The notes: generated from the letters alone by a model not told the origin. DNA of 64,000 nucleotides from IMGVR_UViG_3300049217_000071:204345-268344; one strand, 5' to 3'. Shown: positions 16,667-48,334, counted from the stretch's first letter. Program-made: numbers and translations.

Positions 16667-17632
16667 ATGAGGCTATTTAGACTAGCTGCCCTGATGGAAA
16701 ACAAATACCACCTTACTTCCACGGCAGCCGCTTGGAACGAGGAGGCTAAGAGGGCGGTGAAGAATGCCTTCAATTTGTATGTCAATCCAGATAGTCCTTC
16801 TTTGAAGGAACCCATTCTACAGATGTTGGCTGACAGCGGAGAGCCTGTTTCTAAGAGCATTCTCGCCAAAATGAATAGCGTAGTGGCTAATCTAGATCAC
16901 CCAAATCACGAAAAGATTTTAGGTCTGATCAAGGAGGTAGTCGACACCATCACTCCAGAATCCAAAAAGGAAGTGAGAAACTTCATTCATACTCATACTA
17001 AAGGAACTACTGAGGCTCAGCGTAATCATCGTGAGCGCCTCAAGTCTAAGTTTGATACCGTGACCGTTCCTCTCATCTCCGTTCTTTCCAAGATCGTGGG
17101 TAAGGAGAGAGTTCTGCCAATTCAGAGAATGGAATTGAGTAAAGAGAAACTGCTGATGTTCTCTCGCACAGCCGCCGCCCAGAAATATGGCTTCGATAAT
17201 CTAGATGTTTTACAGCGTTTACTGCAATATCCTGACCTAAAAGAAAGACTAACTACTCTTATTAATGCCGTGGATCGAGGCCATATTCCAGTAGATGGAC
17301 CTGAGATTATGAAGGAAACCGGCGAAATCAAAGCTTTATTGGCACAGAAAGCTGCTACTAATGAGCCATTTTTAGAGGCAGGTGAGGATGAAGCTCAAAG
17401 AGCACTACAACAACCAGCTCCGGAGACTATAGTGTCTAAACAAATGCTAGCTCGTAAAGAAGAGATCAAACAAGAGCGTGAAGAAGAAGAGGCAGCCCAA
17501 CAAAGAGATGCCGAAAATGCTGAGAGAGAAAAAGCCTTTCAACAAGAACAGATAGAAAAAGATAGGGAACGTCACATCGGGCACAACACTAGCAGTCTTT
17601 CCCTAGAGAGACTATTGAGGAAATATCAATGA
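16667..17632 (+). CDS. Hypothetical protein
   Basis: 321-aa ORF with a charged coiled-coil-like C-terminus. Confidence 0.75.
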   Translation: MRLFRLAALMENKYHLTSTAAAWNEEAKRAVKNAFNLYVNPDSPSLKEPILQMLADSGEPVSKSILAKMNSVVANLDHPNHEKILGLIKEVVDTITPESKKEVRNFIHTHTKGTTEAQRNHRERLKSKFDTVTVPLISVLSKIVGKERVLPIQRMELSKEKLLMFSRTAAAQKYGFDNLDVLQRLLQYPDLKERLTTLINAVDRGHIPVDGPEIMKETGEIKALLAQKAATNEPFLEAGEDEAQRALQQPAPETIVSKQMLARKEEIKQEREEEEAAQQRDAENAEREKAFQQEQIEKDRERHIGHNTSSLSLERLLRKYQ

Positions 17633-18342
17633 GAACCGCTGAATTACTACAGGCCATGGCTTCGTGGCTAGAAAGTCCAAACAATGAAGCGATGCTGCTA
17701 GCCGAAGGTGACGAAAAGTGCCTGAGTGTAGTCGCCGAGTCTTGTGTTTTGGCCGCCGCCCTCCTCAAGAAGGCTGCCGAAGAAGTGGATGCTATCGAGC
17801 CTCCAGACCCTTCCACCATCACTCCACAATCCGTAGCAGAGATCGCTGCTTTAGCTGACGCTTTGGATGCTTCTGGTGATCTTCAACTTAAGAAGCAAGC
17901 TTCTGTTTTGGATGAACTATTGATGACCATTGCTGCTCCGCCTAATGCTTATGCCGCTAGAAAAGATTTGCAAGACCAACGAGCCATTGAACTCAAGAAA
18001 AAGTATGAGCAGCCTGGTGAAGAATTGCGTAAGCAAATGAAGGTTAGCGAGACTGAGAAGGCTATCGAGAAGAGCAATATGACTAAGCAGTACAAGATCC
18101 TAGAAGCTCCCCTCAGTACCCGCTATTGTCCAGACCATGCCGGTGCTCAAATCGCCCGTATCGGTGAACACATGTGGCAGTGCGAATTAGATAAGAAGAC
18201 CTATAATTTCGAGACTGGTTTTGAGCTGAACAACGGTGTCAGAGTTCCGGGTGGAGATGTAGCTCAGCAGACCCAAGGTCTCAACATCCCTTACCACGCT
18301 ATCTTCGATACTCGTGAAGGCCGTCTTGGATACAACAAGTGA
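17629..18342 (+). CDS. Hypothetical protein with helical hairpin motif and C-terminal Cys/His cluster
   Basis: ALADALDASG...ASVLD hairpin; RYCPDH...WQC. Confidence 0.75.
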   Translation: MRTAELLQAMASWLESPNNEAMLLAEGDEKCLSVVAESCVLAAALLKKAAEEVDAIEPPDPSTITPQSVAEIAALADALDASGDLQLKKQASVLDELLMTIAAPPNAYAARKDLQDQRAIELKKKYEQPGEELRKQMKVSETEKAIEKSNMTKQYKILEAPLSTRYCPDHAGAQIARIGEHMWQCELDKKTYNFETGFELNNGVRVPGGDVAQQTQGLNIPYHAIFDTREGRLGYNK

Positions 18343-18347
18343 ACGAA

Positions 18348-18488
18348 ATGATCAACAAATCTTACGAAGCTATTAAAGAAGCCCTCTCAAGAATGCCTCT
18401 TGAAGAAGCTAAAGAGTTTGTGAGACTTTTCAACGAGAAACTAGATGAACAAAAACGCACTCAAGAAAATTCTGGAGCACCCAGATAA
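18348..18488 (+). CDS. Possible small protein (46 aa)
   Basis: MINKSYEAIKEALSRMPLEEAKEFVRLF...; fills the gap between ORFs but overlaps the next gene by 44 bp. Confidence 0.35.
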   Translation: MINKSYEAIKEALSRMPLEEAKEFVRLFNEKLDEQKRTQENSGAPR

Positions 18489-19200
18489 AGATGAAATCAT
18501 TACCAAGTTAGTCTTGGATTTCCCAGCCAAAGATATTCACGAGTGGTTAAAAGATAAATACACCAATGTAAATGAAGCTAAACTAGTTATTCCAGAAAAG
18601 AACATCAAGACATTCAGAGATAATTACCTCGACATCTACAATATGATTCGAGATGATATTGCCAAGAGTAAGCAGGCCTTGGCCACCAGCACAGAAGTGG
18701 CCTTGGAGTTATCTGTTCAGAATAATCCAACTTATAAGAGTAAGATGTTGGAACTGGCTGATAAAGAAATCGATGTACGTAAAACGGTGGCCCGTATGTG
18801 TGCTGCCCTGGAAACCCGTTTTGGTCAACTTTTGGATAGGATTCAAGAGGACCCAAGCGATATCAACACTAAAGTAGAGCGCGTCACCATTGAATATGGT
18901 GAATTGCTCGGCGGCCTTCTAGAGAAATACTATAAGTTCACTGAGTCCCCAGCCGACCAGATTATTCAGCACAATGTCACCGTCCAAATGGTGGATCAGC
19001 ATATTTCCGTATTTCATGATGTAGTCCGCGAGGTTCTATCTCAAATGGATTTGGAAAGCTCTATGCTATTTATGGAGCTTTTCAGTGAGAAAATGGCCAA
19101 ACTAAAAGCCACTCTTCCTGAACCAGGTCTCAATACAGATATGAAGGTTGCGGAAGCCAAACTACTCAACGAAACCATCAATCAAAAGCTGAACAAATAA
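18445..19200 (+). CDS. Hypothetical protein, candidate small terminase
   Basis: HTH-like N-terminus (HPDKDEIITKLVLDFPAKDIHEWLKDKY) followed by a long helical region. The function is an inference. Confidence 0.35.
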   Translation: MNKNALKKILEHPDKDEIITKLVLDFPAKDIHEWLKDKYTNVNEAKLVIPEKNIKTFRDNYLDIYNMIRDDIAKSKQALATSTEVALELSVQNNPTYKSKMLELADKEIDVRKTVARMCAALETRFGQLLDRIQEDPSDINTKVERVTIEYGELLGGLLEKYYKFTESPADQIIQHNVTVQMVDQHISVFHDVVREVLSQMDLESSMLFMELFSEKMAKLKATLPEPGLNTDMKVAEAKLLNETINQKLNK

Positions 19201-21107
19201 TGCCGCACGATCCTTCCTACCCAGTTTCTTCTCCTAAAGTGCAGGAAGCGATCCGTCCATATTCTGATGAAGAACTATCTACCGATAAAGATATGGATGA
19301 AAAAATCGAGAAGCTAATGAAGTTTTTCGATGAGCACGGTATCACTTATGATAAGTTTGTTTCTCCGTCCAGAGATTTTATGGACACCAGTAAGAAAGCC
19401 TATCCTAACTATGAGCATTTTGCGTATGTGCCAGGTCAGCATGACACACAGAAATGGTTGATGGCCGTTAAGGACATGTATTACAAGAAGAAGAGGGGCG
19501 TACCCTTTGAAGAGGCTGTTCGCCAGACAACGGGTGGTTGGAAGAAAATGGAGACTTATGACTTCCTAAATTGGCTCAAGTTTTACGAAGAGGGTGCACA
19601 CATGAAATACAAATTCGCACAGGTATGGTATGAAAATGGACAGCCAGGATACTTTCTGCACATCAAGCAGGACACCCAGCAGGTCGCCACACCAACTGTG
19701 GATGTGGATGCCGCCCGTGAAGAAGTAAGTCACCAAGAAGAGAAAAGGCAGATCATTGAGAAGCAACGAGCCAAGATTATTGGTCGTTTGGATTCCGCTG
19801 AAAAGCTACTTCGCTCTCCTGATGGACAAATTTTTGCCGGTCCCGAATTAGAAGGTTTGATGGAGGCCATTTATGGTCTCAAGAAAAAGGTTCAGTTAGT
19901 CAATAAGCTTAGCGTTTCTACTCGTCTCTATGAAGATATGATTGTTCGTGAGTCCAACGTTTTGAGACGTAAAGGTTTTGTCAAAGCCGCTAGCTTGCTT
20001 TACTCTGTAGCTCAAACCCCCGGTGCGGATGCTGTACTCGGTCCCGATGGACAAGCTACCGGTGGTGCCGTACCTCCTCCAGCTCCTCCGCCCGATCCCT
20101 CTGGTGCAGGCCAATCAGGAACTATGGTAGGCTTACCAGCTACTACCCCAGGTACTAACCCAAATACTCCAGTGGATGGCGCGGCCCAAACAGAAAGCCA
20201 ACCATCTGCCGCAGGTCTTCAGCCGCCAGCCGGCCCTCCTGGGACCGCTCAGTCTAGTCCTGCCATTATGCCTCAAGAAGATCCGCAGCCAGCCGGTATC
20301 AAAGAGTTCATGGAGAATATGAACGATGGCAATAAAACCGATGCAGATGATTTGGAAGTGACTGACAATTTGGAAGTGGATGATCCAGAGCAACAACTCA
20401 TGGTATCAGAAGCTCAAGCTATGCCCACCGCCCCAGGTGGACCACCTCCAGCTACTTTGGAAGATGTTCCTATGACGGACACTCCTCCACCAGCACCACT
20501 CAATCCGGTAGATCCAATTCCTGCTATTCCTGAAGCTAAACCTGTCGCAGCTCCAGTAGCTCCAGCTGGTGAAGAACCTTTGGAAGTAACAGAAGACGAT
20601 ATCCCACAAGACACTCCATCAGGTGGTAGCAGTGGTAGTTTAGAGAGCAAGCTAGACAGCACATTTGAGAGCGTCACGATGGAAGAAATTGTGGCCGAGC
20701 TAAAGGACATTTCCCAATACTACAAGGTTAGAGAAATGCCAAGACGTCTTGCCCGCCTAGACATGATGTTTGATAGCAAGGGTATTTCTGCTTACTTCCC
20801 TTCTTTAGCAGAAGCTCAAAGAAGCGCCCTAGAAGCTAACAACTATATCTCTACCCGTATCGATGATATCTTATCTAAGGTCAGCGGTTCCCTTGCTTCC
20901 AAGGATGTAGGCGCCAAACTCAAGGAAGATCAAGATAAAGAGAAGGCTCGTAAGCAGATGAGAAAAGATCAAGAGAATGCCGAACTAGAAGGTGGCGGGG
21001 CTGCCCCTGCCGCTGGTAAAGAAACTCCACAAGTAGAGATGGGTGAGTTAGCTCCTCCAGCCGGTGCTCCCGCTAAAGCTCCGGTAGCTCCACGACCGTT
21101 AGGCTAA
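19200..21107 (+). CDS. Hypothetical protein with long Pro/acidic disordered regions (probable virion protein)
   Basis: 635 aa; KKAY, KFAQ, SVAQ motifs; LEV(T/D)D repeats. Confidence 0.8.
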   Translation: MPHDPSYPVSSPKVQEAIRPYSDEELSTDKDMDEKIEKLMKFFDEHGITYDKFVSPSRDFMDTSKKAYPNYEHFAYVPGQHDTQKWLMAVKDMYYKKKRGVPFEEAVRQTTGGWKKMETYDFLNWLKFYEEGAHMKYKFAQVWYENGQPGYFLHIKQDTQQVATPTVDVDAAREEVSHQEEKRQIIEKQRAKIIGRLDSAEKLLRSPDGQIFAGPELEGLMEAIYGLKKKVQLVNKLSVSTRLYEDMIVRESNVLRRKGFVKAASLLYSVAQTPGADAVLGPDGQATGGAVPPPAPPPDPSGAGQSGTMVGLPATTPGTNPNTPVDGAAQTESQPSAAGLQPPAGPPGTAQSSPAIMPQEDPQPAGIKEFMENMNDGNKTDADDLEVTDNLEVDDPEQQLMVSEAQAMPTAPGGPPPATLEDVPMTDTPPPAPLNPVDPIPAIPEAKPVAAPVAPAGEEPLEVTEDDIPQDTPSGGSSGSLESKLDSTFESVTMEEIVAELKDISQYYKVREMPRRLARLDMMFDSKGISAYFPSLAEAQRSALEANNYISTRIDDILSKVSGSLASKDVGAKLKEDQDKEKARKQMRKDQENAELEGGGAAPAAGKETPQVEMGELAPPAGAPAKAPVAPRPLG

Positions 21108-21112
21108 AATGA

Positions 21113-23207: not shown

Positions 23208-23265
23208 AACCAAGCAATATCATTGCATATAACCATATGAAGAAAGCAGACCCAGAGGTATCTCA

Positions 23266-24228: not shown

Positions 24229-24230
24229 TA

Positions 24231-25600: not shown

Positions 25601-25606
25601 CCTAGT

Positions 25607-34804: not shown

Positions 34805-37800
34805 ATGACCATAATCAAACTGGGCGAAGCACACGAAATCAAACTAGAGTCGGCGGAGTCCTGTATTCCAGAAGTGAGCCCCGAGGTTCTAGAGAACTTT
34901 AGGAAGTTTGCTCAAAACCTCAAGAAGATCGCCCCTAAGGCTGAAGACTTCTTGTATTTCTCTGCCGTTATGATGCATGCTGCCGAGGCCTCTTGTCTCA
35001 ATGACGATGGCACTCCTAAACTAAATGTTCGAGGTGAAGCTGTCCAAGTAGGCTGGGATACCAGTAATGGAACTTGGAAATGGACTACCAATGATCCTAG
35101 CATTAAGCCTTATAAGAATTCTAATGGGGATATCTTCCCAGAATTAGAGTTAATCAAAGCTTACAAGAAATGGAAGCACAAGCCCCTCTGCGTGGATCAT
35201 AAATCGAATTCGGTTGATCACGTCAGGGGCTTTATTGTTGATACTCACTACGATCGTAATCTCAAAAGAGTGATCGCATTATGTGCCTTAGATAAGGCTG
35301 GGTTTCCTCAACTAGCTCGTCAAATTTCTACTGGCGTTTCTAACTGCGTATCTATGGGTACGGCAGTGGGTCGTGCCATTTGCTATGATTGTCAAAGAGT
35401 CGCCCGCACGGAAGCCGATTTCTGCACTCATATGAAGAACAAGTCTTGCTACGGTGAAATAAACGTAGACCTCAATCCTATTGAACTTTCGATTGTGGTC
35501 AACGGTGCCGATCCTAGAGCCAGCATCAAGCATATTATCGCCGCAGCAAATACTCTTAATACCTATGTGGAGAATAAACAAAAGGAATTAGCTAAGTTAG
35601 CTGATCTTAACTTCAATGCTTCATTAAGTGTTGATGACCCACAAGGACAAGAAGGTTTGAGCCATACTCAGTTTCAAGTCAATGGCAATAATCTAGAAAA
35701 GTTCAAAGCTGACCTAGATCAAGCCTTTGCTAAACTATCTGAAATAGCCGGTACCGTAAAAAATACTGAAAAAGATACTAATCTTTCTGCATCTAATCAG
35801 TCGTCGGGTTCAATTGCGATGGATGAAGGCGCCCCGACTGATTCTGGATTGGCTCTCCAAACTCCGCAGACTGCAAGGTTTGCATCAGCAAGTGTAGAGG
35901 CGGAATCTCTAGCTGAACTTCACGAAATAACAGCCACTATTGAAGCAAAGCTAAATCAAATGAAGCAGGGCTTAGAAAAACTAGCAGCTACTTCTACAAA
36001 AACACAAGAGGAAAATATGTCTGGATCAGAAAAACTAAAAGCACAAGGTTATTTCCAGGGCGCTGGTGGTGTTAACGAGCCTACTCCAGGCCAAGTTAAG
36101 TACCCTAAGGACCCACTTAATGAGCAACTTCGTGAACACGAAGACAAGCAGATGGTGGGCGAGCCTCCTTTCCCAGAAGTGGGACCAGTGGACGGCATGC
36201 ATCCTTCTCCAAGTTCGGCTGATCCTTCCGACGAGTTAGCTCGTAAGAAGATGTTAGCTCGTGCTGATCTAGAAGAGCGCGCTATGAAGCGTAATGCCAT
36301 CGTTCAGTTGGCAAAAGAAGCTCTAGAGAGCAAGTCTTACTTTCAAGGTGGCGGTGGCGTCAATGAGCCAACCCCAAACAAGCCAAAGTATCCAAAGGAC
36401 AAGCTCAACGAAGAGCTACGTGAATACGAAGACAAGCAAATGGTTGGTCAACCACCATTCCCAGGCGTAGGTCCTGTCGACGGTCTTCACCCATCCCCAT
36501 TCTCCGCAGATCCAAAGGATGAATTGAAGCGTAAGAAAATGCTCGCCAGAGCTTCCTTGAGAGCCAGATTCGTCAAGGCTGCCAATGGTGACGGTACCCA
36601 GAACAAGTCCAAGAGTGCTTGGGAAGTTTTCCTAGGCGACAAGCTCCTATTGACTGCTTCTGTCGATGAACTATCCGGTGGACACACCGACATGTTGTAT
36701 GACAGCATTGCTACCAAGGAATTTGGTGGTAAATTGATCGAAAAGGTCAAGGTCAATGGTGCTCCAGCCGTAGCCCAACTAATCAAGAAGGCTCAGCCTA
36801 TGCCTCCAGCCCCTCCGGGTGGTGATGCAGGTGCCCCTCCAGAAGCTCCAGACCCAGATGCTGGTCCTCCAGTAGAAGATGCTGGTAAGTCTGGTGATCC
36901 AAAGCAACACGCTATGGAATTGGCTAAGACAGTTAGAGACACTGCCTCCGATTTGATGGAAGCTGTTCGCGCCCTTACCGGCGAGAGCGCTGAAATGGGT
37001 GGTGAAGGTTCTAGCGCACCAGAAGGTGGCGTTGGTGGACCAGCAGGTGGACCAGCCGCGATGGCTGATGACTCCTCAGGTTCCGGCTCTGCTACAGGCA
37101 AGACCTCTACCGCTGAAGGTTTTAGTACTGCAACTCTCAATAACTTGAGAAAGGAACTCAACAGTTCTCTAACTCTCGCTATGAAAGAAGCTGTCGCTGA
37201 ACTCAACGATCACGGTCAAGAATTGGACATGATTGTCAGCATGTACGACAAGGGTGCTGTTACCGATCAAAACTCTGACTTCGTCAACAACGTCGTAACC
37301 GACGCCTTGAATGAAGCCAAGACTACCGTGGCTGACGGATTCAAGCTAATGACCGCTTTCGTCAAGTATGCCCGTGGTACTCAAGCTATTGTCAAGCGTG
37401 CTGAGATCGAAACCGAACTTCAAGCACTTGCAACTGAAGGAGATACTATGAGCGATACAAAAGATAGTCACTCCGCAGATGGCGGTGACTTAATGGGACT
37501 AATCAACGACACCAACGCAGATCTAGACGCTGTCAAGATGATGGTTGATGATAATGACCACGAAGGTGGCATGGAAGGACTAGATGACTTAGATGACTTA
37601 GGTGATCTAGGACTCGATGGTCTATCCGAAGGTTTAGTTGATGATAACGCTGGTGTGATGGTTGATACCCCAGCCAAAGCCGCAGAGGTTACCAAAATGA
37701 ATCCAGATGCTAGTGTAAAAGTTGCCTCCTTTGATACCAAAGAGGGCCGCGCAGCTCTAAGAGCCAAGTTGGCCGCTGATGCTACCGGCAAGGAAGAGAA

Positions 37801-38494
37801 TGGAGAAATCCAGGATGCTTCCAAGATTAAGTTCAGTGATATGTTGGATCAAGCCGACAAGTTGACTGATGGTCAAACTCAATTGGATGTTAAGCCATCC
37901 GATAGTCTTGGATTGGTAGAAACTCTACCAGAAGTTAATAAGGCTATGTTGGAACTTGCTAAGGCTCCACCAAACGTCCGTAAGGAAGCTGCTGCAATCC
38001 AGAAACTCGTTTCTGAAGGCAAGCTAGATCCAAAGGATGTGGACGCTCTAGTCGCAGAAGGTCTAGACAAGGAAGCTGTCTCTTACTGGAAGAAATACTA
38101 CGGTGAAGTTGATGGTGGCGGTGAATTTGCCAGTGAATTGGTGAAGGAACATGTCAAGTCCGCAATGGCCGAAGAACTAAACCAGTTCAGAGTCAAGCTA
38201 GCTCGTGCCTACGAATTAGCTTATGATATGGCTGACCGTGGACTATGTCATCACGAAAGACCAGCAATTAGCGCTCAAGTGGATGAAATCATGAAGTTCA
38301 ATGATGAATCCTTTGACTCTCTCAAGAGAGTAGTTGCTCGTCACACTCCATTACTTCACAAGGAAGCTGGACGTATCCCACAAGTTGGTTTGAGAGGTGA
38401 TCAAGATGTCACCCCATCTACCCAAGCAGTGGTTGAAGAGGATGCATATGCACAGCTATCTTCAATGTTCGGCACCAAACGCGGTGTGTTCTAA
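34805..38494 (+). CDS. Prohead (capsid maturation) protease fused to a long scaffold-like region
   Basis: N-terminal PLCVDH...RG, VSMG and ELSIVVNGADPRA resemble the HK97/herpes-type (clan SH) protease signature. About 1000 aa of helical and low-complexity sequence follow. Confidence 0.8.
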   Translation: MTIIKLGEAHEIKLESAESCIPEVSPEVLENFRKFAQNLKKIAPKAEDFLYFSAVMMHAAEASCLNDDGTPKLNVRGEAVQVGWDTSNGTWKWTTNDPSIKPYKNSNGDIFPELELIKAYKKWKHKPLCVDHKSNSVDHVRGFIVDTHYDRNLKRVIALCALDKAGFPQLARQISTGVSNCVSMGTAVGRAICYDCQRVARTEADFCTHMKNKSCYGEINVDLNPIELSIVVNGADPRASIKHIIAAANTLNTYVENKQKELAKLADLNFNASLSVDDPQGQEGLSHTQFQVNGNNLEKFKADLDQAFAKLSEIAGTVKNTEKDTNLSASNQSSGSIAMDEGAPTDSGLALQTPQTARFASASVEAESLAELHEITATIEAKLNQMKQGLEKLAATSTKTQEENMSGSEKLKAQGYFQGAGGVNEPTPGQVKYPKDPLNEQLREHEDKQMVGEPPFPEVGPVDGMHPSPSSADPSDELARKKMLARADLEERAMKRNAIVQLAKEALESKSYFQGGGGVNEPTPNKPKYPKDKLNEELREYEDKQMVGQPPFPGVGPVDGLHPSPFSADPKDELKRKKMLARASLRARFVKAANGDGTQNKSKSAWEVFLGDKLLLTASVDELSGGHTDMLYDSIATKEFGGKLIEKVKVNGAPAVAQLIKKAQPMPPAPPGGDAGAPPEAPDPDAGPPVEDAGKSGDPKQHAMELAKTVRDTASDLMEAVRALTGESAEMGGEGSSAPEGGVGGPAGGPAAMADDSSGSGSATGKTSTAEGFSTATLNNLRKELNSSLTLAMKEAVAELNDHGQELDMIVSMYDKGAVTDQNSDFVNNVVTDALNEAKTTVADGFKLMTAFVKYARGTQAIVKRAEIETELQALATEGDTMSDTKDSHSADGGDLMGLINDTNADLDAVKMMVDDNDHEGGMEGLDDLDDLGDLGLDGLSEGLVDDNAGVMVDTPAKAAEVTKMNPDASVKVASFDTKEGRAALRAKLAADATGKEENGEIQDASKIKFSDMLDQADKLTDGQTQLDVKPSDSLGLVETLPEVNKAMLELAKAPPNVRKEAAAIQKLVSEGKLDPKDVDALVAEGLDKEAVSYWKKYYGEVDGGGEFASELVKEHVKSAMAEELNQFRVKLARAYELAYDMADRGLCHHERPAISAQVDEIMKFNDESFDSLKRVVARHTPLLHKEAGRIPQVGLRGDQDVTPSTQAVVEEDAYAQLSSMFGTKRGVF
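36050..36555 (+). repeat. Two copies of a ~75-aa module (288-nt period) inside the protease-scaffold
   Basis: YFQG(A/G)GGVNEPTP...KYPKD.LNE.LRE.EDKQMVG.PPFP.VGPVDG.HPSP.SADP.DEL.RKKMLARA occurs twice. Confidence 0.95.
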
Positions 38495-38524: not shown

Positions 38525-39307
38525 ATGAAAAACCAAAGCGTATCAGATTTTGTCGCTGCAACTATGGATGCAGTGCTAAACAGCCCAGAACACAAAGCCT
38601 TGTTCGGCTCCCAATACAAGTATGCACAGTCCAAGGATGCTATGTGCGCCAAGCACGGCAAAATGGACTCTTGCGCAGCCGATGATCAAGATGCCAAGAA
38701 GAAGGACTCTAGCTCTGCCTCTGACATGAACGATGCCAGAAAAGTAAAGAAGTATGACTCTTCTGATGCAGATGACCAGGATGCTAAGAAGAAAGACTCT
38801 TCCGATGCTGATGATCAAGATGCTAAGAAGATGCCACCATGGCTAAAGAAGAGGGACGAATCTTCTGCTGACGATCAAGATGCCAAGAAGAAAGATTCTT
38901 CTGACGCAGATGATCAAGACGCCAAGAAGAAAGACTCTTCCGATGCTGACGATCAAGATGCCAAAAAGAAGGACTCTTCTGACGCTGATGATGACGACCT
39001 AGAGGCTTCTGCCGCTTTTGATATTGCTATCGATAGTTTGCTCACCGCCTCCGCCGCTCTTGATTCCGTGGGTCTCGGTAAGGGCTCTTCAGTTATCTTG
39101 AAGGTAGCTTCTTTGGTTGTTGAAGCCAAGAAGAAGGAAAAGGATTCCAAGAAAAAGAAGAAGGAAGACTCTAAGAAGAGTGATTCCAAGAAGTCTTCTA
39201 CCAAGGATTCTCAATCCGCTAAGGACAAGAAGTCTCCTCCAAAGAAAGACTCCAAGAAGGATGAGAAGAAATCCTCTTCCAAGCCTTCCTCTTCTTCCAA
39301 GAAGTAA
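38525..39307 (+). CDS. Low-complexity charged protein (possible DNA-condensing core protein)
   Basis: DSSDADDQDAKKK repeats and a Lys/Ser-rich C-terminal tail; RBS gagga. Confidence 0.8.
   Translation: MKNQSVSDFVAATMDAVLNSPEHKALFGSQYKYAQSKDAMCAKHGKMDSCAADDQDAKKKDSSSASDMNDARKVKKYDSSDADDQDAKKKDSSDADDQDAKKMPPWLKKRDESSADDQDAKKKDSSDADDQDAKKKDSSDADDQDAKKKDSSDADDDDLEASAAFDIAIDSLLTASAALDSVGLGKGSSVILKVASLVVEAKKKEKDSKKKKKEDSKKSDSKKSSTKDSQSAKDKKSPPKKDSKKDEKKSSSKPSSSSKK
38680..39000 (+). repeat. Coding tandem repeat, 39-nt/13-aa unit (DSSDADDQDAKKK)
   Basis: Six ADDQDAKK copies plus degenerate ones, with synonymous divergence. Confidence 0.9.
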
Positions 39308-39320
39308 ATCGTAATAGTTG

Positions 39321-39390
39321 CACCCTCAGAAGGAATTGAACCTCCGCTCCCATAGTTTAGCAGACCTGGGCAGGAACCACCAATGAGGGT
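39321..39390 (-). tRNA. Atypical tRNA-Ser(GCU)-like element (reduced D arm, no long variable arm)
   Basis: The minus strand folds with acceptor ACCCTCA/TGAGGGT, T arm GGAGG-TTCAATT-CCTTC, loop CT-GCT-AA closed by a bulged 7-bp stem, a 13-nt D region and a 3-nt variable region. No encoded CCA. Confidence 0.55.
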
Positions 39391-39433
39391 GTAACTATAT
39401 GTCGAATTAAACATACGTTACAGCTACTTATCG

Positions 39434-39994
39434 ATGAATACAACCATCTGTTCAATATATAAAATTGTCAATAATATGGACGGCAATGTATATATTGGGC
39501 AAACATGGATTCCTGTTCAAGCTAGATTTAGGAGGCACAAGTATGCTTCCAGTAATTGCATCAAGCTTGCAAGAGCCATAAAAAAGTACGGAGAAGATAA
39601 CTTCAAAGTCGAACTAATTACTGTCTGTGGCACCCAAGAGGTTGCAGATTATTTGGAAGCCTATTTTATCAACAAATTTGACTCTATCAGGAGTGGATAC
39701 AACATACTGGCTGGTGGTAAGACAAGTAGCAGAAGGGGAGCAAAACACTCCCAAGAAACTAAGGATAAACTGTCAAAATTAGCCACAGGGCGTAGGCACT
39801 CGATCGAGACAAAAGAAACTCTGTCCGCACTAAGAAAAGGCATTCCACTCTCGATCGAACATAGATCCAAGTTATCAGAGGCTAAGAAAGGCAAAAAGTT
39901 CACCGAAGAGCATAAATCTAAATTACTTGGAAATCATAAGGGCATGACGTGGAATATAGTAGACGGCAAAAGAGTGTGGATGGAGAAACGATGA
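39434..39994 (+). CDS. GIY-YIG homing-endonuclease-like protein
   Basis: SIYKIVN...VYIGQT, conserved Arg and Glu, GYN, NUMOD3-like H(S/T)xETKxKLS repeats. Confidence 0.9.
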   Translation: MNTTICSIYKIVNNMDGNVYIGQTWIPVQARFRRHKYASSNCIKLARAIKKYGEDNFKVELITVCGTQEVADYLEAYFINKFDSIRSGYNILAGGKTSSRRGAKHSQETKDKLSKLATGRRHSIETKETLSALRKGIPLSIEHRSKLSEAKKGKKFTEEHKSKLLGNHKGMTWNIVDGKRVWMEKR

Positions 39995-40224
39995 GCGTCA
40001 AATTATTCAATATGTCTAATTTTGAGGACGAAATCTATCGTTCTATGGAAACAACCCTGGCCAAAAACCAGACGGAAAATACCTACCGGTTCCAAAAACT
40101 CGCCAAGGCTGTCGATTTCTTGAACACTGCCGCTGAGATCTTTGATCAAGCTGGCATGTTAGAGGAATCTCGTCAAATCACTGAGATTTTACGTAGTTTA
40201 GCCAAGGACTTCTCCAATGAATAA
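39991..40224 (+). CDS. Small helical-hairpin protein
   Basis: ggag RBS before the ATG at 39991; paralogous to the N-terminus of the next gene (FEDE...A.EIF...G). Confidence 0.75.
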   Translation: MSVKLFNMSNFEDEIYRSMETTLAKNQTENTYRFQKLAKAVDFLNTAAEIFDQAGMLEESRQITEILRSLAKDFSNE

Positions 40225-40921
40225 GAAGATGTTTGAGGACGAACTAATCGTTGGTATGCAACAAGAGTTGCGCAAGCAAGCTTCGGCCGATCCGCCTAAC
40301 CTTGTCAAGGCAGCAGAATGTTTGCATGCTGCCCTGGAAATCTTTGAGGGCGTTGGTTTACAAGCCAAGGCCGATCAAGTCCTACAAGTTTTGGAAGGTA
40401 TTAGCAAGCAAGCTGTTCCATATTCTAAAGCAGAGAAAGTGCCCGCTCCTGAAGAACTTATGGCCGCCGGCATTACGCAGCGCGACATGCAGGGTCTGGC
40501 CAAGGGTGATAAATCCTCTGTGGCAAAGTTTAACATTGTCCTACGTCAAATGGGAATCTCTGACCATGCCATGGGCCAGCTCATCGGGCCCACCAATGTG
40601 ATGTCTGAAGAAGATGCCCGCAAGGTCATCAATCCTAACCTCGCATTCAGTAAGGTATGGGAAATGCAGGCTGTTGGTCAAGACGTTATGCAGGCTAAGC
40701 ACAAGCAACCAAGTCGTCCAGATAAGATTCATGATCCTCATACCAAAGGACTCACTCCTGATAAAGAAGTAGAGAACCTCAAACATCATGGCATTGTTTT
40801 TAATATGGCCGATGATGGTGCTGCTGAAGATGCATTAATGAATATGGAAGTCCAAGACGATGCTTTGGAAGTTTCCGATCAAGATGTTCCATTAGCTGAT
40901 TTTGAGGACGAAAGAAACTGA
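40217..40921 (+). CDS. Hypothetical protein (probable virion protein)
   Basis: RKQAS, helical hairpin, NMADD and LEVSD motifs. Confidence 0.78.
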   Translation: MNKKMFEDELIVGMQQELRKQASADPPNLVKAAECLHAALEIFEGVGLQAKADQVLQVLEGISKQAVPYSKAEKVPAPEELMAAGITQRDMQGLAKGDKSSVAKFNIVLRQMGISDHAMGQLIGPTNVMSEEDARKVINPNLAFSKVWEMQAVGQDVMQAKHKQPSRPDKIHDPHTKGLTPDKEVENLKHHGIVFNMADDGAAEDALMNMEVQDDALEVSDQDVPLADFEDERN

Positions 40922-40987: not shown

Positions 40988-41677
40988 ATGCTTAGATTAG
41001 TACAAGTTGGTAATACTTTACCCGTCAGTTTTATTTGCGATCCCTCGGCTGAGTTCCAGCCTGGTATGGTAGCCGAACTTACTGTTATTGGTAATCAGGT
41101 AATGGCTACTGTTAGTAATGGAACTGCCCCAATTGGTATTATTGATGATATCAAAACCAAAGCTTTTACCAACGTTTCCTGGAATGAAACGGTTATTGTG
41201 CCAGCCGTCCCTGCGGTAGGCCCCAACAATACCATCGTTACCCCAGTAGATATCAAGGCCGAATTACGCCGACCTAACATCATCCCTTCTAGTTTCAATT
41301 CTACTGTCAATGTGGTGCTCAATCCTATCAACGGTATTATTACCTTCATAGCGGGCACCCCACTCAATATCGATTTAAATGGATCTGGTTCTCCCAATGG
41401 TATCAAGGCTATTGTTAGCTACACCTATATGGTATCCAATATTCCAGGTGATGATAGCACGGCCGGTTCTGGTAGAATGACCGTTTGGTTTGAGAGAATG
41501 TTCTTCCAAACCGAACAGTATGAAACTAACCAGCAATATCCAGTGCGCGCCAATGTGTATGTGAGTGAAGTGGGGCTTCTGACCACTCGTAGGCCAAGCC
41601 CAATTCATCCAGCCGTGGGTATGGTAACAGCCCCTCCTACCCCGATGAATGCTATGGTAGAAATTTTGTGGTTCTGA
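40988..41677 (+). CDS. Probable capsid decoration/cement-like protein
   Basis: Beta-rich; DDSTAGSGRMTVW parallels HTATGSGKVTCW of 48503..49303; preceded by the AATA-N6-CAT motif at 40955. Confidence 0.5.
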   Translation: MLRLVQVGNTLPVSFICDPSAEFQPGMVAELTVIGNQVMATVSNGTAPIGIIDDIKTKAFTNVSWNETVIVPAVPAVGPNNTIVTPVDIKAELRRPNIIPSSFNSTVNVVLNPINGIITFIAGTPLNIDLNGSGSPNGIKAIVSYTYMVSNIPGDDSTAGSGRMTVWFERMFFQTEQYETNQQYPVRANVYVSEVGLLTTRRPSPIHPAVGMVTAPPTPMNAMVEILWF

Positions 41678-42472: not shown

Positions 42473-42491
42473 ATACCTTTGTGATAATGTT

Positions 42492-42520
42492 TTGCTGGCC
42501 TATGCAAAATCCCGTATAAT
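42492..42520 (+). promoter_or_regulatory. Sigma70-like promoter
   Basis: TTGCTG (42492-42497), 17 nt, TATAAT (42515-42520), upstream of 42549. Confidence 0.45.
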
Positions 42521-42548
42521 ATTGACAATCTCCACCCGTTGAGGCCAA

Positions 42549-43712: not shown

Positions 43713-44872
43713 ACAAACAAGCAATAGTCAGTCTGATCAAAAAGATGGGCCAGGGATTAGAAGAAGCTCCGGGTCTGGGCGGAGGTTTGGAAGAAGCTCC
43801 AGGTCTAACCAAAATCGGACCTACTCCGAGTGGAGGTTTAGAAGAAGCCCCAGGCGTGACCAGGATAGGGCCAGGTGGTGTCATGCCTGGCACTGTAACC
43901 CCACCTTCCGCTAATGCCCTGCATTCTATCAAGGTGATGCAACAGGCTCTTGTTGATTTGGCTAGAGACGTCATGCAACAGCTTAGCGTGCAGAACATTG
44001 CCCAACCAGGACAGCAGGCCGGACAAGCCGCTGGTAGAAATGCTTTCGGTGATTTTATCACCAAAAACTATTTAGCTAACTCTGATGTACCTGGCGTGGA
44101 ATTCAATCCTGATGCTAATGCACAATACATGGCACAGAAGCAGCCTACCGAGCCTAGCAAACTCAACGTGGTCATGGATACTATGCGAAGGATTGGCGAT
44201 CCAAAGACCGGAGAGTTTGCCGTGGATGGTAAGTGGGGACCTCGTACCAATGCAGCCCTACACAACGCCTATGCTTATGGTTTCGCTTTACTCAAGTTGG
44301 CGGGAGACTTTCATTTCCAACCTACTTCCTACACGCCAGAAAATCTAGCCGCTTTCAGAGGTGAAATCCCGGCAGAATACACGGATTTCGATCTAACACA
44401 GAAAGTAGATGCGGCTCCTGACGCTGCTAAACAAATAGAAGCTATTCGTAAGTTGTTTGGTGAAGTCAAGACCCACATCTTAGAGAAGCCGGCCTATCGA
44501 GCCTATATCGAAGGTGACCAACCTCTACATACCTATACAAAACCAGGCTCCGCTTACATGCTGGACCCTAAAGCTATTGATAGTATGAGTCAGCAATTCA
44601 ATACTAGACTTCGTGTTAGCCTCAAGACTCCTAACGGAGGATGGGTGAACCAGCCTATCACCGTCAACGATTTGACTAGCTTAGATGCGCTCAAGAAATG
44701 GCAACAGGCTCATGCTCCGCAGGCACCACTACCTACTATCCTCAATTCACTCAAATCAAATCTCGATATGATGGACGGTAATCATCCTGTCAGTGCTGAA
44801 CAACCAGTCCAAAGACCACAGCAACCTCAACCTACGCATCGTCAGCATAACAGAAGACGCCAAGGCCAATAA
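43709..44872 (+). CDS. Hypothetical protein with peptidoglycan-binding-like motif
   Basis: AVDGKWGPRTNAAL resembles the PG_binding_1 motif; three GLEEAPG repeats at the N-terminus. Confidence 0.7.
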   Translation: MNKQAIVSLIKKMGQGLEEAPGLGGGLEEAPGLTKIGPTPSGGLEEAPGVTRIGPGGVMPGTVTPPSANALHSIKVMQQALVDLARDVMQQLSVQNIAQPGQQAGQAAGRNAFGDFITKNYLANSDVPGVEFNPDANAQYMAQKQPTEPSKLNVVMDTMRRIGDPKTGEFAVDGKWGPRTNAALHNAYAYGFALLKLAGDFHFQPTSYTPENLAAFRGEIPAEYTDFDLTQKVDAAPDAAKQIEAIRKLFGEVKTHILEKPAYRAYIEGDQPLHTYTKPGSAYMLDPKAIDSMSQQFNTRLRVSLKTPNGGWVNQPITVNDLTSLDALKKWQQAHAPQAPLPTILNSLKSNLDMMDGNHPVSAEQPVQRPQQPQPTHRQHNRRRQGQ

Positions 44873-45957
44873 TGTCTTTTCTACACACCGATCCACAACT
44901 ACTTAGCGAGTTACTCAAATACGGCCAGAACCCTGACGCCTATGCGCAGCAGACTGCCAATTTTGCGAACATCCGTCAGTTGATTGGTAATTTGGAAAGC
45001 CAACTTGTGCCGGGTGCCGAGAACGAAGTGTCTCACGAGGGTGATCCGGGAACAGCCGCTGTCCTCCGAACGCAAAACCTAGAGAGCCTAGGAGCTTTGG
45101 TCAATTTTTTGGAGACCAACAAGATTACCATCAATGGCAAGAGAATTGCTTACTCTCCGGGCGAAAATCCGCACACCGAAGATTATGTTCCCTATCAATT
45201 AGAGCCGGGTGGATCTTTACTAGAGCCGGTCGACAGAAGCAAAATGACGCAAGGTTTCGTAGTCAACAAAGATCTCTTAGCTGCTTATCTAGTTTCGCTA
45301 CAACAGCGTCAACAAGAGAAGCCTAATCCAGTGATGAATGTGATGCTAACTAAACTGATCAAAGAGACCAATGACCTCTTGGAAACCAAGATCAGTGAGA
45401 AGTATGTGGCGCCTGCTAAACCTGGACAAACTGTTGCGCCATCTGGTGCTAAATCAGAACAATCGGGGGCCGCTGTCCCAGATATGGGCGCTACTTTGGA
45501 ATACTTGGCCGATTTGGTGCCTTTCAATAGTCAGTTTATCAACCTCGACTCTCTCAAAGATTTTGCTGATAGGTTTGCCGCCCTCATGCCTAATGATGCT
45601 GGTATTACTAATCAAGCTCGTCAAGTGGATCAGTCCATCGGTATTGCTAAGAGTTTGATGCTAACACCTAGCGATGTTATTCAATTGAACAACTTGACCT
45701 CTAGTCAATTTAGCCTCTTGACCCATCAACCACAGCAATTAGTGTTGTCTCTCAATACTGTCATTACACAGGCCGGCTCTCTTTACAATAGATTCATGCT
45801 CTTAGCTAAGGGTAAAGTTAGTGCATCAGCTTACAGAAAAGTGCAGCAACAGATTATGAGCGGAGGCCCGCAAGAAACCAACATCGGTACTCTCAACGAG
45901 ATTTTGTCTAACCTACAATCCCAACACCAACTTGAAATGCAAAGAACGAGGCGATAA
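44872..45957 (+). CDS. Hypothetical protein (probable internal virion protein)
   Basis: 361-aa ORF translationally coupled to both neighbours. Confidence 0.78.
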   Translation: MSFLHTDPQLLSELLKYGQNPDAYAQQTANFANIRQLIGNLESQLVPGAENEVSHEGDPGTAAVLRTQNLESLGALVNFLETNKITINGKRIAYSPGENPHTEDYVPYQLEPGGSLLEPVDRSKMTQGFVVNKDLLAAYLVSLQQRQQEKPNPVMNVMLTKLIKETNDLLETKISEKYVAPAKPGQTVAPSGAKSEQSGAAVPDMGATLEYLADLVPFNSQFINLDSLKDFADRFAALMPNDAGITNQARQVDQSIGIAKSLMLTPSDVIQLNNLTSSQFSLLTHQPQQLVLSLNTVITQAGSLYNRFMLLAKGKVSASAYRKVQQQIMSGGPQETNIGTLNEILSNLQSQHQLEMQRTRR

Positions 45958-47060
45958 TGTCCAGCGAGATTAGTCTCTGCACAGATCTACTGCTGATAGA
46001 AAGTCTTTTGGGAGATTCCAAGCTCACCAAGAGGGCAGGGGTGGTGTCTGATCTTTTGGATCGCATGAAGGAATATTTTGGTAAGCGTATCGACAAGAGC
46101 CAACCGACCGAAAGCGTTCTCAATCTCTTAGCTCCCGGCACTTTATGGATGGTTCTTCAAGGCGTTGGCCTAGGCAAATGGGGCCTACTCATTGGTTTAC
46201 TCTTAGAAGTTTTTCACGTCAATGTTGTCGGTTTACTAGAGACACTGTGGACAGAAGTGAAATCATTGTTAGCCACTCACGGTAAAGTTTCTTCAGGACA
46301 AATCGACAGCGTGGTCAATAGCGCCATTGCGGCTAATAACGATCCGGGCAATGAAGATGAGGCCAGAAAGGGTTATCAAGTTTTACAGCGGAATCCTGAT
46401 TTGGCCAAGGTAGAAGAAAACCTTTTTGCTGATGATCACGTTTATTCTTCTGCCGAGCTACTCAAAGAAACTCGTTTCCTTAGTTTGTCCATGATCGCTT
46501 ATGAGGATCAAAAGATGAGGCTTACCAAGCAAGCTGATTTATCTAGCTTCTTAGGTGGCTATAGTAAGGGTAATGCTAAGTACACCAGTATTCTAGGTAG
46601 AATCTTAGGCTTTGTTTTCACAGTAGCTCTAGCCTCTGCCGGTTTGATGGTGGCCGGAGACAAGATCAATAAGTTCCTCGGACGTCCAAATGCTATTGAT
46701 GGCACTTACCAAGCGGGACAACCCGAAAGTGAAGCACCTGCGGCTCCAGTATATCATTCCACTCAGACCAAATTTCCATCCAAAGGTGATTCGCCTTTGC
46801 CTCGCTCGTGGCCTTTGATGAACAACCCCGCTAACATCGAAAGTATGTTGGTACAGTTTGCCAAGGATACCTATTCCGGTTTGGATGGTAAGGAAGGTCT
46901 CATCACGGGCTCTTCGGCATTTCAAGCTATTGCTCAACAGATAGATTGGTTCAATATCCATAACAAAGGTAGTGCGGCTATTTTTCTTCCGCCCAGCTAC
47001 ACTTCTAAAAAGCAATTAGTGGATGCTTTCATTGATGATGTGGCTAAAGCGGCTGGATAA
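45957..47060 (+). CDS. Hypothetical protein with hydrophobic segments
   Basis: LWMVLQGVGLGKWGLLIGLLLEVF and ILGFVFTVALASAGLMVAG; TKRAG and TKQAD motifs. Confidence 0.78.
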   Translation: MSSEISLCTDLLLIESLLGDSKLTKRAGVVSDLLDRMKEYFGKRIDKSQPTESVLNLLAPGTLWMVLQGVGLGKWGLLIGLLLEVFHVNVVGLLETLWTEVKSLLATHGKVSSGQIDSVVNSAIAANNDPGNEDEARKGYQVLQRNPDLAKVEENLFADDHVYSSAELLKETRFLSLSMIAYEDQKMRLTKQADLSSFLGGYSKGNAKYTSILGRILGFVFTVALASAGLMVAGDKINKFLGRPNAIDGTYQAGQPESEAPAAPVYHSTQTKFPSKGDSPLPRSWPLMNNPANIESMLVQFAKDTYSGLDGKEGLITGSSAFQAIAQQIDWFNIHNKGSAAIFLPPSYTSKKQLVDAFIDDVAKAAG

Positions 47061-47110
47061 TTCGGCATATCATCGCATAACAATGTGATTTTCTATAGGT
47101 GGACATCAAT

Positions 47111-48334
47111 ATGAGAAAAAGTGAAATCTTCGAGTCGTTCGTCAAAATAGCCCAAGAAAAGGGCCTTACTTCCGCAACCGAAAAGGGTGATGGTGAGCAC
47201 GAATTTGCCGAACATACGGAAAAGAACTTAGATGATCCAAGATGGGACTCTCTGAGCATTGAGCAAATTGGCAAGCTATACGGCACCAAGCCAAAGGCCC
47301 CCAAGGAGATGGAATATGAGCGCAACATCATCGAGAACGCTCATCCAAAGCCAGTTGTTTTCTTCATGTCCCACGATAAGCTCAATAGTTTGGTAGAAAA
47401 CGAAAACGAAGGCCAAGACGCCCGCATTCACATTTCTCTCAAAGAACCTGATGGTCATTTGACTCAACGCAAATATGCGGAGAAGAAACTAGTTCTTTCT
47501 TTGGTCAGATTAGCTAACGATTTGGACAATCGCAATCAAGATGAACTACGCGCTTTAGCTGATGTCTGTTTAGTTCAGACCGCCACCCCAGGTCTCAAGA
47601 AAACCGCTATTCCACTTTTAGTGTATCCTATTGCCGCCACTATAGGTGCCATTTACGCTAAGAATCACCTAGATTTCCATAGTGATGGCTTTACGGCTGA
47701 CTATGAAAAGACAGTAGGCGAAATAGATGACCTGCTCAATTCTAACAGCAGCTTGCAAACTACAGTAGGGGCCGGATACACTTATACCCCGCAATTCTTA
47801 CAAACCGTCAATCAACTCAAGACTGATTTGGCCGAGTTGAATACAGAGAGGCAGAAGGCTTTGACTATCATAGCAAATCTAAAAACCCCTAGAAACGCCG
47901 ATGAACTCAAGGTGTTAGCTCAGCAACCAGAAACTCATGAGGCGGTGCAAGCTCTCAACGATCTCAATACGGTAATGAATAAAATTGCTACTTTCATTTT
48001 GAAGATAGGCCGTGATTTTAGTAGCGCCTCCTATAAGCAGCAAGCTATTGAACACAAAGGCTTTTTATCCTCTTTGGTAGATTACACAGGAGTTCTCCAT
48101 GGTGGGGCTGGTTTAGTGGCCGATGACTTCGATGATGTGCGTAATGCCCTCAAGACTTTGATGAACGATGTTGTTGAAATTGTTGGAGAATTGAAGAATT
48201 CCGAAACTCTTCGAAAAACTGTTATACGAGAGTTATCTGCTGCCCAAGGTGCCGTTTCTAGAATGACAGAACAGGCTCCCGCCGCTAAACCGGCTGAAAA
48301 TCCAGTAGCAGAACTTGATGAAGAAGTAGGATAA
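47111..48334 (+). CDS. Hypothetical protein (probable internal virion protein)
   Basis: aggtgg RBS; VKIAQ, RKYAE and KKTAI followed by hydrophobic PLLVYPIAATIGAIYA; helical hairpin RLANDLD. Confidence 0.8.
   Translation: MRKSEIFESFVKIAQEKGLTSATEKGDGEHEFAEHTEKNLDDPRWDSLSIEQIGKLYGTKPKAPKEMEYERNIIENAHPKPVVFFMSHDKLNSLVENENEGQDARIHISLKEPDGHLTQRKYAEKKLVLSLVRLANDLDNRNQDELRALADVCLVQTATPGLKKTAIPLLVYPIAATIGAIYAKNHLDFHSDGFTADYEKTVGEIDDLLNSNSSLQTTVGAGYTYTPQFLQTVNQLKTDLAELNTERQKALTIIANLKTPRNADELKVLAQQPETHEAVQALNDLNTVMNKIATFILKIGRDFSSASYKQQAIEHKGFLSSLVDYTGVLHGGAGLVADDFDDVRNALKTLMNDVVEIVGELKNSETLRKTVIRELSAAQGAVSRMTEQAPAAKPAENPVAELDEEVG

What the first reader, a model, noticed from the sequence alone, without database searches (positions are those of the whole stretch)
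16667..48334. A shared helical hairpin (h-x-x-A-x-x-h-D-x-x-G-x4-A) recurs in at least six unrelated-looking proteins
Examples: EIAALADALDASGDLQLKKQASVLD (17629), VRESNVLRRKGFVKAASLLYSVAQ (19200), LLTASAALDSVGLGKGSSVILKVAS (38525), LNTAAEIFDQAGMLEESRQITEIL (39991), LHAALEIFEGVGLQAKADQVLQVL (40217), LVRLANDLDNRNQDELRALADVCL (47111), with partial forms at the N-termini of 16667 and 32365. In several cases a K/S-x-A motif follows directly. It could be a portable procapsid-docking tag that is later clipped, analogous in role to the T4 capsid-targeting sequence but structured.
Basis: inference. Interest (0 to 1): 0.6.

Follow-up and report, generated by a model that had tools for sequence, protein, structure and literature searches.

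The report
Mostly chance hairpins; one real module
The six look-alike helical hairpins in this huge phage are not one shared tag, but two of them belong to a previously unnamed 70-residue N-terminal domain that related phages attach to many different protein tails.

Summary
All six peptides are in the sequence, on the + strand, at the stated places. As a set they are not above chance. Leave-one-out profiles, built from single sequences or whole families, do not recover the other members. Equally good matches occur in unrelated proteins across the genome, with no enrichment in the head region.

Only two segments are demonstrably related, those at 39991-40224 (77 aa) and 40217-40921 (234 aa, residues 1-66). 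Profile-profile comparison gives probability 99.2%, E 3e-19.

The domain has no Pfam or PHROGs match. It occurs in 508 representative protein clusters from huge-phage metagenomes. It sits at the N-terminus in 147 of 150 representatives and is followed by at least 39 unrelated tails. In every locus examined it occupies the same head-module slot.

So "portable" holds for this domain. "Procapsid docking" and "clipped" remain untested.

The neighbouring gene 38525 may be a third, split copy, but this is only a lead. The hairpins in 17629, 19200 and 47099 are independent, family-specific conserved helices.

The parts
39991..40224 (+). 77-aa stand-alone copy of the N-terminal three-helix domain. The ATG at 39991 is the likely start; the listed GTG ORF starts at 39949. 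Contains cited segment 40120-40191.
   Evidence: Family alignment A2. Smith-Waterman score against 40217 is 86, against 26.5 +/- 4.2 for shuffles. hhalign probability 99.2, E 3e-19. HMM E 3e-32.
40217..40921 (+). 234-aa protein. The N-domain is aa 1-66 (nt 40217-40414) and contains cited segment 40322-40393. It is followed by a helical globule (aa 78-153) and a disordered acidic tail with a conserved HTKGLTPEK..NLKHHG..FNMADD block and a LEV.D...DFEDER end.
   Evidence: 188 homologues, alignment A1, AlphaFold2 model, HMM E 1e-25.
38525..39307 (+). 260-aa protein with a conserved N-terminus (aa 1-35), a variable acidic/basic low-complexity repeat, a conserved hairpin (aa 164-200, cited segment 39038-39112) and a Lys-rich tail. 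It may be a split third copy of the N-domain, but this is only a lead.
   Evidence: Conservation. Two collinear hhalign hits to the N-domain, the only one of 25 families to give this. The spliced profile aligns over 61 columns at probability 16-62, against a best decoy of 13.5. Unspliced, the probability is only 4-12.
17839..17913 (+). Cited segment in the 237-aa protein 17629-18342. It forms helices 4-5 of an N-terminal helical bundle. The family is very conserved (52-81% identity) and has an invariant C167-P-D-H170...Q184-C185 motif.
   Evidence: No significant link to the other hairpins.
19944..20015 (+). Cited segment in the 635-aa protein 19200-21107 (aa 249-272). It is conserved within its own family and lies just before a Pro-rich disordered region.
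   Evidence: Not recovered by any profile.
47501..47572 (+). Cited segment in the 411-aa protein 47099-48334 (aa 135-158). It is conserved within its own family and has N where the others have G.
   Evidence: Not recovered by any profile. In-register scores against 39949 and 40217 are negative.
34805..38494 (+). 1229-aa protein with a prohead-protease-like domain (aa 105-274). It marks the upstream end of the conserved slot.
   Evidence: PHROGs phrog_18299 at 1.8e-11 and phrog_2774 at 7e-13. Synteny.
40988..41677 (+). 229-aa, very conserved protein that marks the downstream end of the slot.
   Evidence: E 1e-105 to 1e-127 in relatives.
39434..39994 (+). GIY-YIG homing endonuclease inserted between 38525 and 39991.
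   Evidence: Pfam PF01541 at 1.7e-10 and phrog_314 at 1.4e-34.
49373..50479 (+). Major capsid protein. The family consensus begins at residue 32 of the ORF. Together with TerL at 25607-27484 and the portal at 27567-29480, it gives the context for the head module.
   Evidence: phrog_2522 at 3.6e-78. 54% identity to Bacillus phage G gp27..

Best explanation
The window is the last 64 kb of a 268-kb huge-phage genome. Its capsid protein is related to that of Bacillus phage G.

The six 'hairpins' are not one element. Five independent protein families each contain a conserved amphipathic helix-turn-helix. A small residue, usually Gly, sits at the turn, preceded by a hydrophobic and then an acidic residue. 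That is the ordinary grammar of a Gly-capped helix followed by a second packing helix, so picking the best look-alikes out of 64 kb yields a chain of weak resemblances. The first part of this is shown by the tests here. The capping-grammar reading is inference.

The one real repeat is a three-helix N-terminal domain of about 70 residues. It is present once as a stand-alone 77-aa protein (39991-40224) and once at the start of the next gene (40217-40921).

Across related huge phages the domain is always N-terminal. It sits in one fixed slot between the protease-bearing giant protein plus the 38525-like gene and the 40988-like gene. It comes in one or two copies and carries many unrelated C-terminal tails (shown).

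The most likely mechanism is inference. The domain would be a constant assembly handle that brings a variable tail into the prohead interior by binding a conserved core partner. Candidate partners are its own paralogue, the 38525 protein or the protease-bearing protein. This would resemble the conserved targeting sequences of T4 internal proteins and the long propeptides of giant-phage head proteins. Whether the domain is removed by the protease is unknown.
For: - Genome and head module.
- No set-wide signal. Profile-profile comparisons among 25 syntenic families give only noise-level hairpin matches, at probability 3-12%.
- Real paralogy: Smith-Waterman z about 14 and hhalign 99.2%. There are exactly two copies in the six-frame genome (E 3e-32 and 1e-25), with the next hit at E > 1, and two copies in 65 of 66 related loci.
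- Fold: three helices, H3-24, H29-46 and H49-65.
- Portability: 508 representative clusters at E <= 1e-3. The domain starts at residue <= 10 in 147 of 150. 61 proteins are stand-alone, and 79 have tails of 50 aa or more that fall into 39 BLASTP clusters. One tail is DUF5661 and the rest have no Pfam match.
- Fixed slot: five further contigs.
- Signature: M19 is invariant, and L23, A40 and A47 are conserved at 94-97% and G55 at 89%, in 233 rows.
- Pairing of the two copies: ipSAE 0.46 against a best control of 0.00. The tool rates this 'weak support'. The mark was reached by 58 of 80 solved complexes and 2 of 110 mismatches, but at 0.60 or below only 7 solved complexes and both mismatches passed. 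Runs agree in at least 88% of contacts and the partner's pLDDT is at least 66.
- Precedent for N-terminal targeting propeptides in T4 and giant phages: PMC5694885.
Against: - No proteomic or structural data exist for this uncultured clade, so virion location, docking and cleavage are all inferred from gene position.
- A few hairpin pairs are each other's best local profile match, in register (38525-39991 at E 0.0026, 17629-47099 at E 0.014). A regex tailored after the fact hits only 17629, 38525, 39949 and 40217. Remote homology or functional convergence for some of them therefore cannot be excluded.
- The complex prediction is only weak support.
- Many tails are short, charged and low in complexity. 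This would also fit a scaffold-like structural role rather than cargo.
- No conserved cleavage motif was seen at the domain boundary.
Confidence: 0.7

Rival explanations
1. All six hairpins, plus partial forms in 16667 and 32365, are copies or convergent versions of one procapsid-docking tag that the prohead protease removes.
For: Each segment is among the best-conserved parts of its own family. A few pairs are reciprocal top-20 neighbours among 74,385 windows. Most of the proteins lie in or near the head module.
Against: There is no set-wide statistical signal. The similarity is a chain rather than a clique, and many pairs rank in the thousands. Equal-scoring hits are spread over the whole genome. 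Four of the six are internal, and one lies inside a helical bundle. No common cleavage motif was found, and [KS].A has a 10% base rate.
Confidence: 0.06
2. The N-domain proteins, possibly together with 38525, are scaffold or core proteins. The three-helix domain would be an oligomerisation module, and the variable charged tails would be low-constraint spacers rather than cargo.
For: Their position between the protease and the capsid gene is where scaffold and core genes lie in T4-like modules (PMC5694885). The proteins are helical and highly charged. There is weak predicted pairing of the two copies. Many tails are charged and low in complexity.
Against: Some tails are folded or recognisable domains: DUF5661, a Cys-rich knuckle, and a helical globule with pLDDT > 90 in 40217. 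The gene immediately upstream of the capsid gene is a different protein, 48503. No similarity to known scaffolds was found in PHROGs, Pfam or the PDB.
Confidence: 0.25
3. 38525 is a third copy of the N-domain, split by an insertion of about 130 aa of low-complexity sequence between helix 1 and helix 2. Three adjacent genes would then share the module through old tandem duplication.
For: Two collinear hhalign matches: N-domain 9-26 to aa 4-21, and 36-68 to aa 164-196. It is the only one of 25 families with a second collinear hit. The spliced profile aligns over 61 columns at probability 61.5, E 8e-5 for the best splice, against a best of 13.5 for 21 decoy families. The gene is always directly upstream of the N-domain genes. 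The helix 1-helix 2 loop is where the N-domain family has its gaps.
Against: Unspliced probabilities are 4-12%. Three other splice choices give only 16-21%, close to the best decoys. HMM E is 1.8. The splice points were chosen after seeing the data.
Confidence: 0.35

Closest known systems
T4 capsid targeting sequence (CTS) of internal proteins IPI-III and Alt
   Same: A conserved N-terminal element sits in front of variable proteins that are encoded in a plastic locus of the head-gene region. The proposed role is to bring the protein into the prohead core (PMC5694885).
   Different: The CTS is a peptide of 10-20 residues that ends at a gp21 cleavage site. Here the element is a folded three-helix domain of about 70 residues, it also exists as a stand-alone protein, and no cleavage site is evident. 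Function here is untested. There is no sequence similarity.
Long N-terminal propeptides and paralogue families of giant phage head proteins (SPN3US gp53/gp54, phiKZ, 201phi2-1)
   Same: These are huge phages in which several inner-head proteins carry long N-terminal regions, shared among paralogues, that are thought to target them to the prohead (PMC5694885).
   Different: Those propeptides are over 100 residues and are cut at A/S/G-x-E sites shown by mass spectrometry. No proteomics exists for this clade. PHROGs, Pfam and tblastn against cultured phages gave no match.
P22 gp8 scaffolding protein C-terminal helix-turn-helix coat-binding domain, and phi29 gp7 (from general knowledge, not tested here)
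   Same: A small helical hairpin mediates capsid assembly contacts.
   Different: In P22 the hairpin is C-terminal and basic. Here the real module is N-terminal and has three helices. Sequence and fold searches of the PDB found no link.
Generic Gly-capped helix followed by a second helix (Schellman-type C-cap; from general knowledge)
   Same: The pattern of hydrophobic, acidic, x, x, Gly, hydrophobic at the turn is what all six segments share.
   Different: This is a structural grammar found in any helical protein, not a family. It explains resemblance without common descent or common function.

Membership tests
   Leave-one-out and leave-one-family-out tests recover only the 39949/40217 pair. 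The others give E 0.16-0.99, a low rank, or no hit.
   10 of 78 neighbours outside the six lie in 16667-48334, which holds 12.2% of residues. The loosest common pattern gives 38 hits against 38.0 expected.
New N-terminal three-helix domain family (39991/40217 type) | Significant match to the family profile | tested here: met
   39991 scores E 3e-32 and 40217 scores E 1e-25. All other ORFs of the genome score E > 1. So 17629, 19200 and 47099 are not members, and 38525 is inconclusive.
New N-terminal three-helix domain family (39991/40217 type) | N-terminal position and a fixed slot in the head module | tested here: met
   147 of 150 representatives start at residue <= 10. The slot is conserved in 66 loci and in 5 further contigs.
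T4-type capsid targeting sequence | Short N-terminal peptide ending in a prohead-protease cleavage site | tested here: not met
   The real module is a folded domain of about 70 aa. Four of the six cited hairpins are internal. No conserved cleavage motif was seen at the boundary.
T4-type capsid targeting sequence | Necessary and sufficient for packaging a protein into proheads | not testable with these tools
   This needs fusion and encapsidation experiments or proteomics.
P22-type scaffolding coat-binding helix-turn-helix | C-terminal basic helix-turn-helix that binds the coat protein | not tested
   None of the cited hairpins is at a C-terminus. Binding to the capsid protein was not modelled, because the single complex job went to the paralogue pair.

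The most novel reading that the evidence does not exclude
The N-terminal three-helix domain of about 70 residues is a capsid-interior targeting or anchoring handle of an uncultured clade of huge phages related to phage G. The fixed slot after the protease-bearing protein would then be a cassette site where the handle is recombined with many different cargo tails, which are packaged and perhaps ejected into the host. This would be a folded-domain counterpart of the T4 internal-protein/CTS system. The neighbouring 38525 protein may be a split copy that nucleates the assembly.
Probability: 0.25. Interest if true: 0.6.

Novelty: new member of a known kind. Interest (0 to 1): 0.3.

Why it matters
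The claim as written would have meant a universal structured packaging tag, and it does not hold. That guards against building a tool on a chance motif.

What remains is an unannotated domain that is widespread: 508 representative clusters. Its constant N-terminal position, fixed head-module slot and highly variable tails make it a concrete candidate for how huge phages load variable proteins into their capsids. No scaffold or targeting system has yet been defined for this clade. If the role is confirmed, the domain could serve as a handle for packaging foreign proteins, as the T4 CTS has.

Tried and rejected
- Pfam and PHROGs on all ten host proteins gave nothing beyond the homing endonucleases.
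- Megablast of 24 kb against cultured phages gave no match. tblastn of 17629 and 40217 against cultured phages gave no match.
- Profiles of the 17629 and 40217 families found nothing in Bacillus phage G.
- PDB sequence search with both family profiles gave nothing meaningful.
- Foldseek of both AlphaFold2 models against the PDB gave only generic helical bundles at E > 0.2.
- The ESM Atlas look-up for 40217 was uninformative.
- BLASTP with composition statistics missed the 39991/40217 paralogy. Smith-Waterman with shuffles and hhalign were needed to see it.
- 48503 is not detectably related to the phage G decoration protein gp26.
- The complex prediction of 40217(1-70) with 39991 gave only 'weak support' (0.46 against a best control of 0.00). 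It is not used as evidence of binding.
- The similarity of the 42549 N-terminus to the N-domain (FED...RS[ML]EK; probability 3.7-12%) was judged too weak to claim.
- Docking of any hairpin on the capsid protein was not modelled, because only one complex job was allowed.
- AlphaFold2 was not run for 38525, 47099 or 19200, because only two jobs were allowed. Their hairpin fold is inferred from sequence only.
Full report
**Setting.** The window is the last 64 kb of a single-contig virus record of 268,344 bp with 44.7% G+C. It carries a head-gene module:
- large terminase, 25607-27484;
- portal, 27567-29480;
- a virion transglycosylase, 30797-31945;
- a 1229-aa protein with a prohead-protease-like domain, 34805-38494;
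- the major capsid protein, 49373-50479.

The capsid protein is 54% identical to gp27 of Bacillus phage G. It is more distantly related to the capsid proteins of other jumbo phages. No cultured phage matches the DNA.

**The observation.** None of their host proteins matches Pfam or PHROGs.

The written consensus h..A..hD..G....A matches no protein in the genome. Relaxed forms are at or near the shuffled expectation: 12 hits against 6.3 +/- 2.6 for A..hD..G, and 38 against 38.0 +/- 5.2 for the loosest pattern all six satisfy.

An HMM of the six finds no further segment better than E about 1. Leaving one segment out gives these results:
- 17629 and 38525 come back only at E 0.99 and 0.16.
- 40217 ranks 44th.
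- 47099 and 19200 are not recovered.
- 39949 returns at E 1e-4, because its neighbour 40217 is in the training set.

Smith-Waterman with 300-2000 shuffles shows one significant pair, 39991-40224 against residues 1-64 of 40217-40921. Its score is 86 against 26.5 +/- 4.2. Every other pair has z < 3.3.

In an in-register BLOSUM62 scan of all 74,385 windows of the proteome, that pair scores 38. The other cited pairs score 20-24 or are negative. Windows scoring 20-33 occur in unrelated proteins all over the genome. Of 78 such neighbours, 10 lie in 16667-48334, a region that holds 12.2% of the residues.

**Comparative data.** The 40217 protein has 188 homologues in metagenomes, many on contigs of 180-510 kb. 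Two scans of IMG/VR gave 66 and 58 syntenic loci. From these I built alignments for 27 families of the region.

Each cited segment is among the best-conserved parts of its own family, so each is probably important to its own protein. Profile-profile comparison links only two pairs of families:
- 39991 with 40217, at probability 99.2%, E 3e-19.
- The N-terminal domains of 42549 and 47099, at probability 94%, E 9e-8. This second link does not involve the cited hairpin.

The best hairpin-to-hairpin matches are 38525-39991 at 11.6%, 38525-40217 at 2.6% and 17629-47099 at 3.1%. These are in register but no better than unrelated pairs. Family-level leave-one-out profiles recover nothing.

**Folds.** AlphaFold2 with the family alignments gives the following.
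- 40217 has three N-terminal helices, H3-24, H29-46 and H49-65, with G47 at the turn. These are followed by a confident helical globule (aa 78-153) and a disordered acidic tail.
- 17629 has a bundle of five or six helices. The cited hairpin (H66-81, H85-102) is an internal part of the bundle, not a tag.

Neither model has a meaningful relative in the PDB.

**What is really there.** The two adjacent genes share an N-terminal domain of about 70 residues. A family HMM finds exactly two copies in the six-frame translation of the genome, and two per locus in 65 of 66 related loci.

An exhaustive profile search of 1.84 billion representative proteins finds 508 clusters at E <= 1e-3 and 190 at E <= 1e-10. 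Among the best 150:
- the domain starts within the first ten residues in 147;
- 61 proteins are stand-alone (95 aa or fewer);
- 79 carry tails of 50 aa or more, which fall into 39 BLASTP clusters.

The tails include a DUF5661 domain, a Cys-rich knuckle, coiled coils and charged low-complexity stretches.

In five further contigs the gene always lies in the same slot. The order is the protein of about 1200 aa with the protease-like domain, then the 38525-like gene, then one or two N-domain genes, often a homing endonuclease, and then the very conserved 229-aa protein.

The consensus of 233 rows is MFK..SFE.E[LI]..SMEK.LV.NQ.E...F.KLAKA.DYLN.AAEIF[DE].AGM..EA..[IV]T.[VIL]L..LA, with M19 invariant.

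**A possible third copy.** 38525 lies directly upstream in every locus. It gives two collinear matches to the N-domain profile: its N-terminus to helix 1, and its hairpin to helices 2-3. It is the only one of 25 families to do so.

I then removed the variable low-complexity insert of about 130 residues. The spliced profile aligns over 61 columns at probability 61.5% (E 8e-5) for one splice and 16-21% for three others. The best of 21 decoy families, each optimised over offsets, reaches 13.5%. I treat this as a lead with roughly one chance in three.

**Mechanism.** The following is shown: a constant N-terminal folded module, a fixed position in the head module, and highly variable tails.

The following is inferred. 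The module is an assembly handle that brings its tail into the prohead interior by binding a conserved partner. This would be analogous to the T4 CTS and to the long propeptides of giant phages (PMC5694885).

A single complex prediction of the two copies gave ipSAE 0.46 against a best control of 0.00. The tool rates this as weak support, meaning more often wrong than right unless the guess was likely beforehand. The mark was reached by 58 of 80 solved complexes and 2 of 110 mismatches, but at 0.60 or below only 7 solved complexes and both mismatches passed. Runs agreed in at least 88% of contacts and the partner's pLDDT was at least 66. I do not count this as evidence of binding.

A scaffold-like structural role is the main rival. 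Cleavage is unknown, and no conserved cut site is visible at the domain boundary.

**Verdict.** The six-fold shared hairpin is not a real shared feature. Two of the six segments mark a new, unannotated and widespread N-terminal domain of huge-phage head modules. For that domain 'portable' is supported, while 'docking' and 'clipped' remain open.

Noticed in passing
window 21894-21953 (aa 8-27 of ORF 21873-23207); 36053-36112 and 36338-36397 (aa 417-436 and 512-531 of ORF 34805-38494): The motif [YF][FY]QG.GG.NEPTP.K.KY occurs at the N-terminus of the 444-aa protein 21873. It also occurs twice inside the protease-bearing 1229-aa protein, within a tandem repeat of about 95 aa (BLASTP E 1.8e-7). 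It is conserved in both families: 39 of 47 and 17 of 25 members, always at residues 7-14 in the 21873 family. This is a statistically solid shared short module, and a better candidate for a targeting or cleavage signal than the hairpin.
   Followed up: partly
window 42549-43712 and 47099-48334: These two head-module proteins share an N-terminal domain (aa 10-145 against aa 7-125; hhalign probability 94%, E 9e-8). Conserved blocks include ..LEKVA.EKGL.., AHP and KKP.GKL. It is distinct from the cited hairpin of 47099.
   Followed up: partly
window 20352-20390 and 20580-20600 (19200 protein, aa about 385-397 and 461-467); 40865-40879 (40217 protein, aa 217-221): The acidic motif LEV[ST/D][DE] has only 6 hits in the proteome. 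Four of them lie in 19200 (three copies) and in the C-terminal tail of 40217, and the motif is conserved in both families. It could be a short linear binding or cleavage motif.
   Followed up: partly
window 39434-39994 and 41753-42472; related loci L130, L131, L133: The slot around the N-domain genes is a hot spot for homing endonucleases. This genome has two GIY-YIG genes there. Relatives carry LAGLIDADG, HNH or GIY-YIG genes at the equivalent places.
   Followed up: partly
window 33105-33872: A dual-specificity/tyrosine-phosphatase-like protein (Pfam PF03162, 2.2e-9) is encoded inside the head module and is conserved in relatives (E 1.5e-77 in L131). It may be a packaged enzyme.
   Followed up: no
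window 17629-18342: This 237-aa protein is unusually conserved across the clade (52-81% identity) and has invariant C167, P168, H170, Q184 and C185, which looks like a zinc knuckle. Its function is unknown and it has no homologue in phage G.
   Followed up: partly
window 49373-49465: The capsid ORF as listed starts at a TTG. The family consensus starts 31 codons later (MNMF...), so the true start is probably the ATG at about 49466.
   Followed up: no
genome G000:C1 about 44594-45442 (outside the window): Two short ORFs resemble parts of the major capsid protein: 44% identity over 128 aa and 41% over 29 aa. They may be a broken or partial second capsid-gene copy.
   Followed up: no
window 54658-58982 and 60873-63852: There are two further sets of paralogous proteins. 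54658, 55223 and 56607 share terminal domains. 60873, 61634 and 62368 are about 50% identical. They may be fibre or tail proteins.
   Followed up: no
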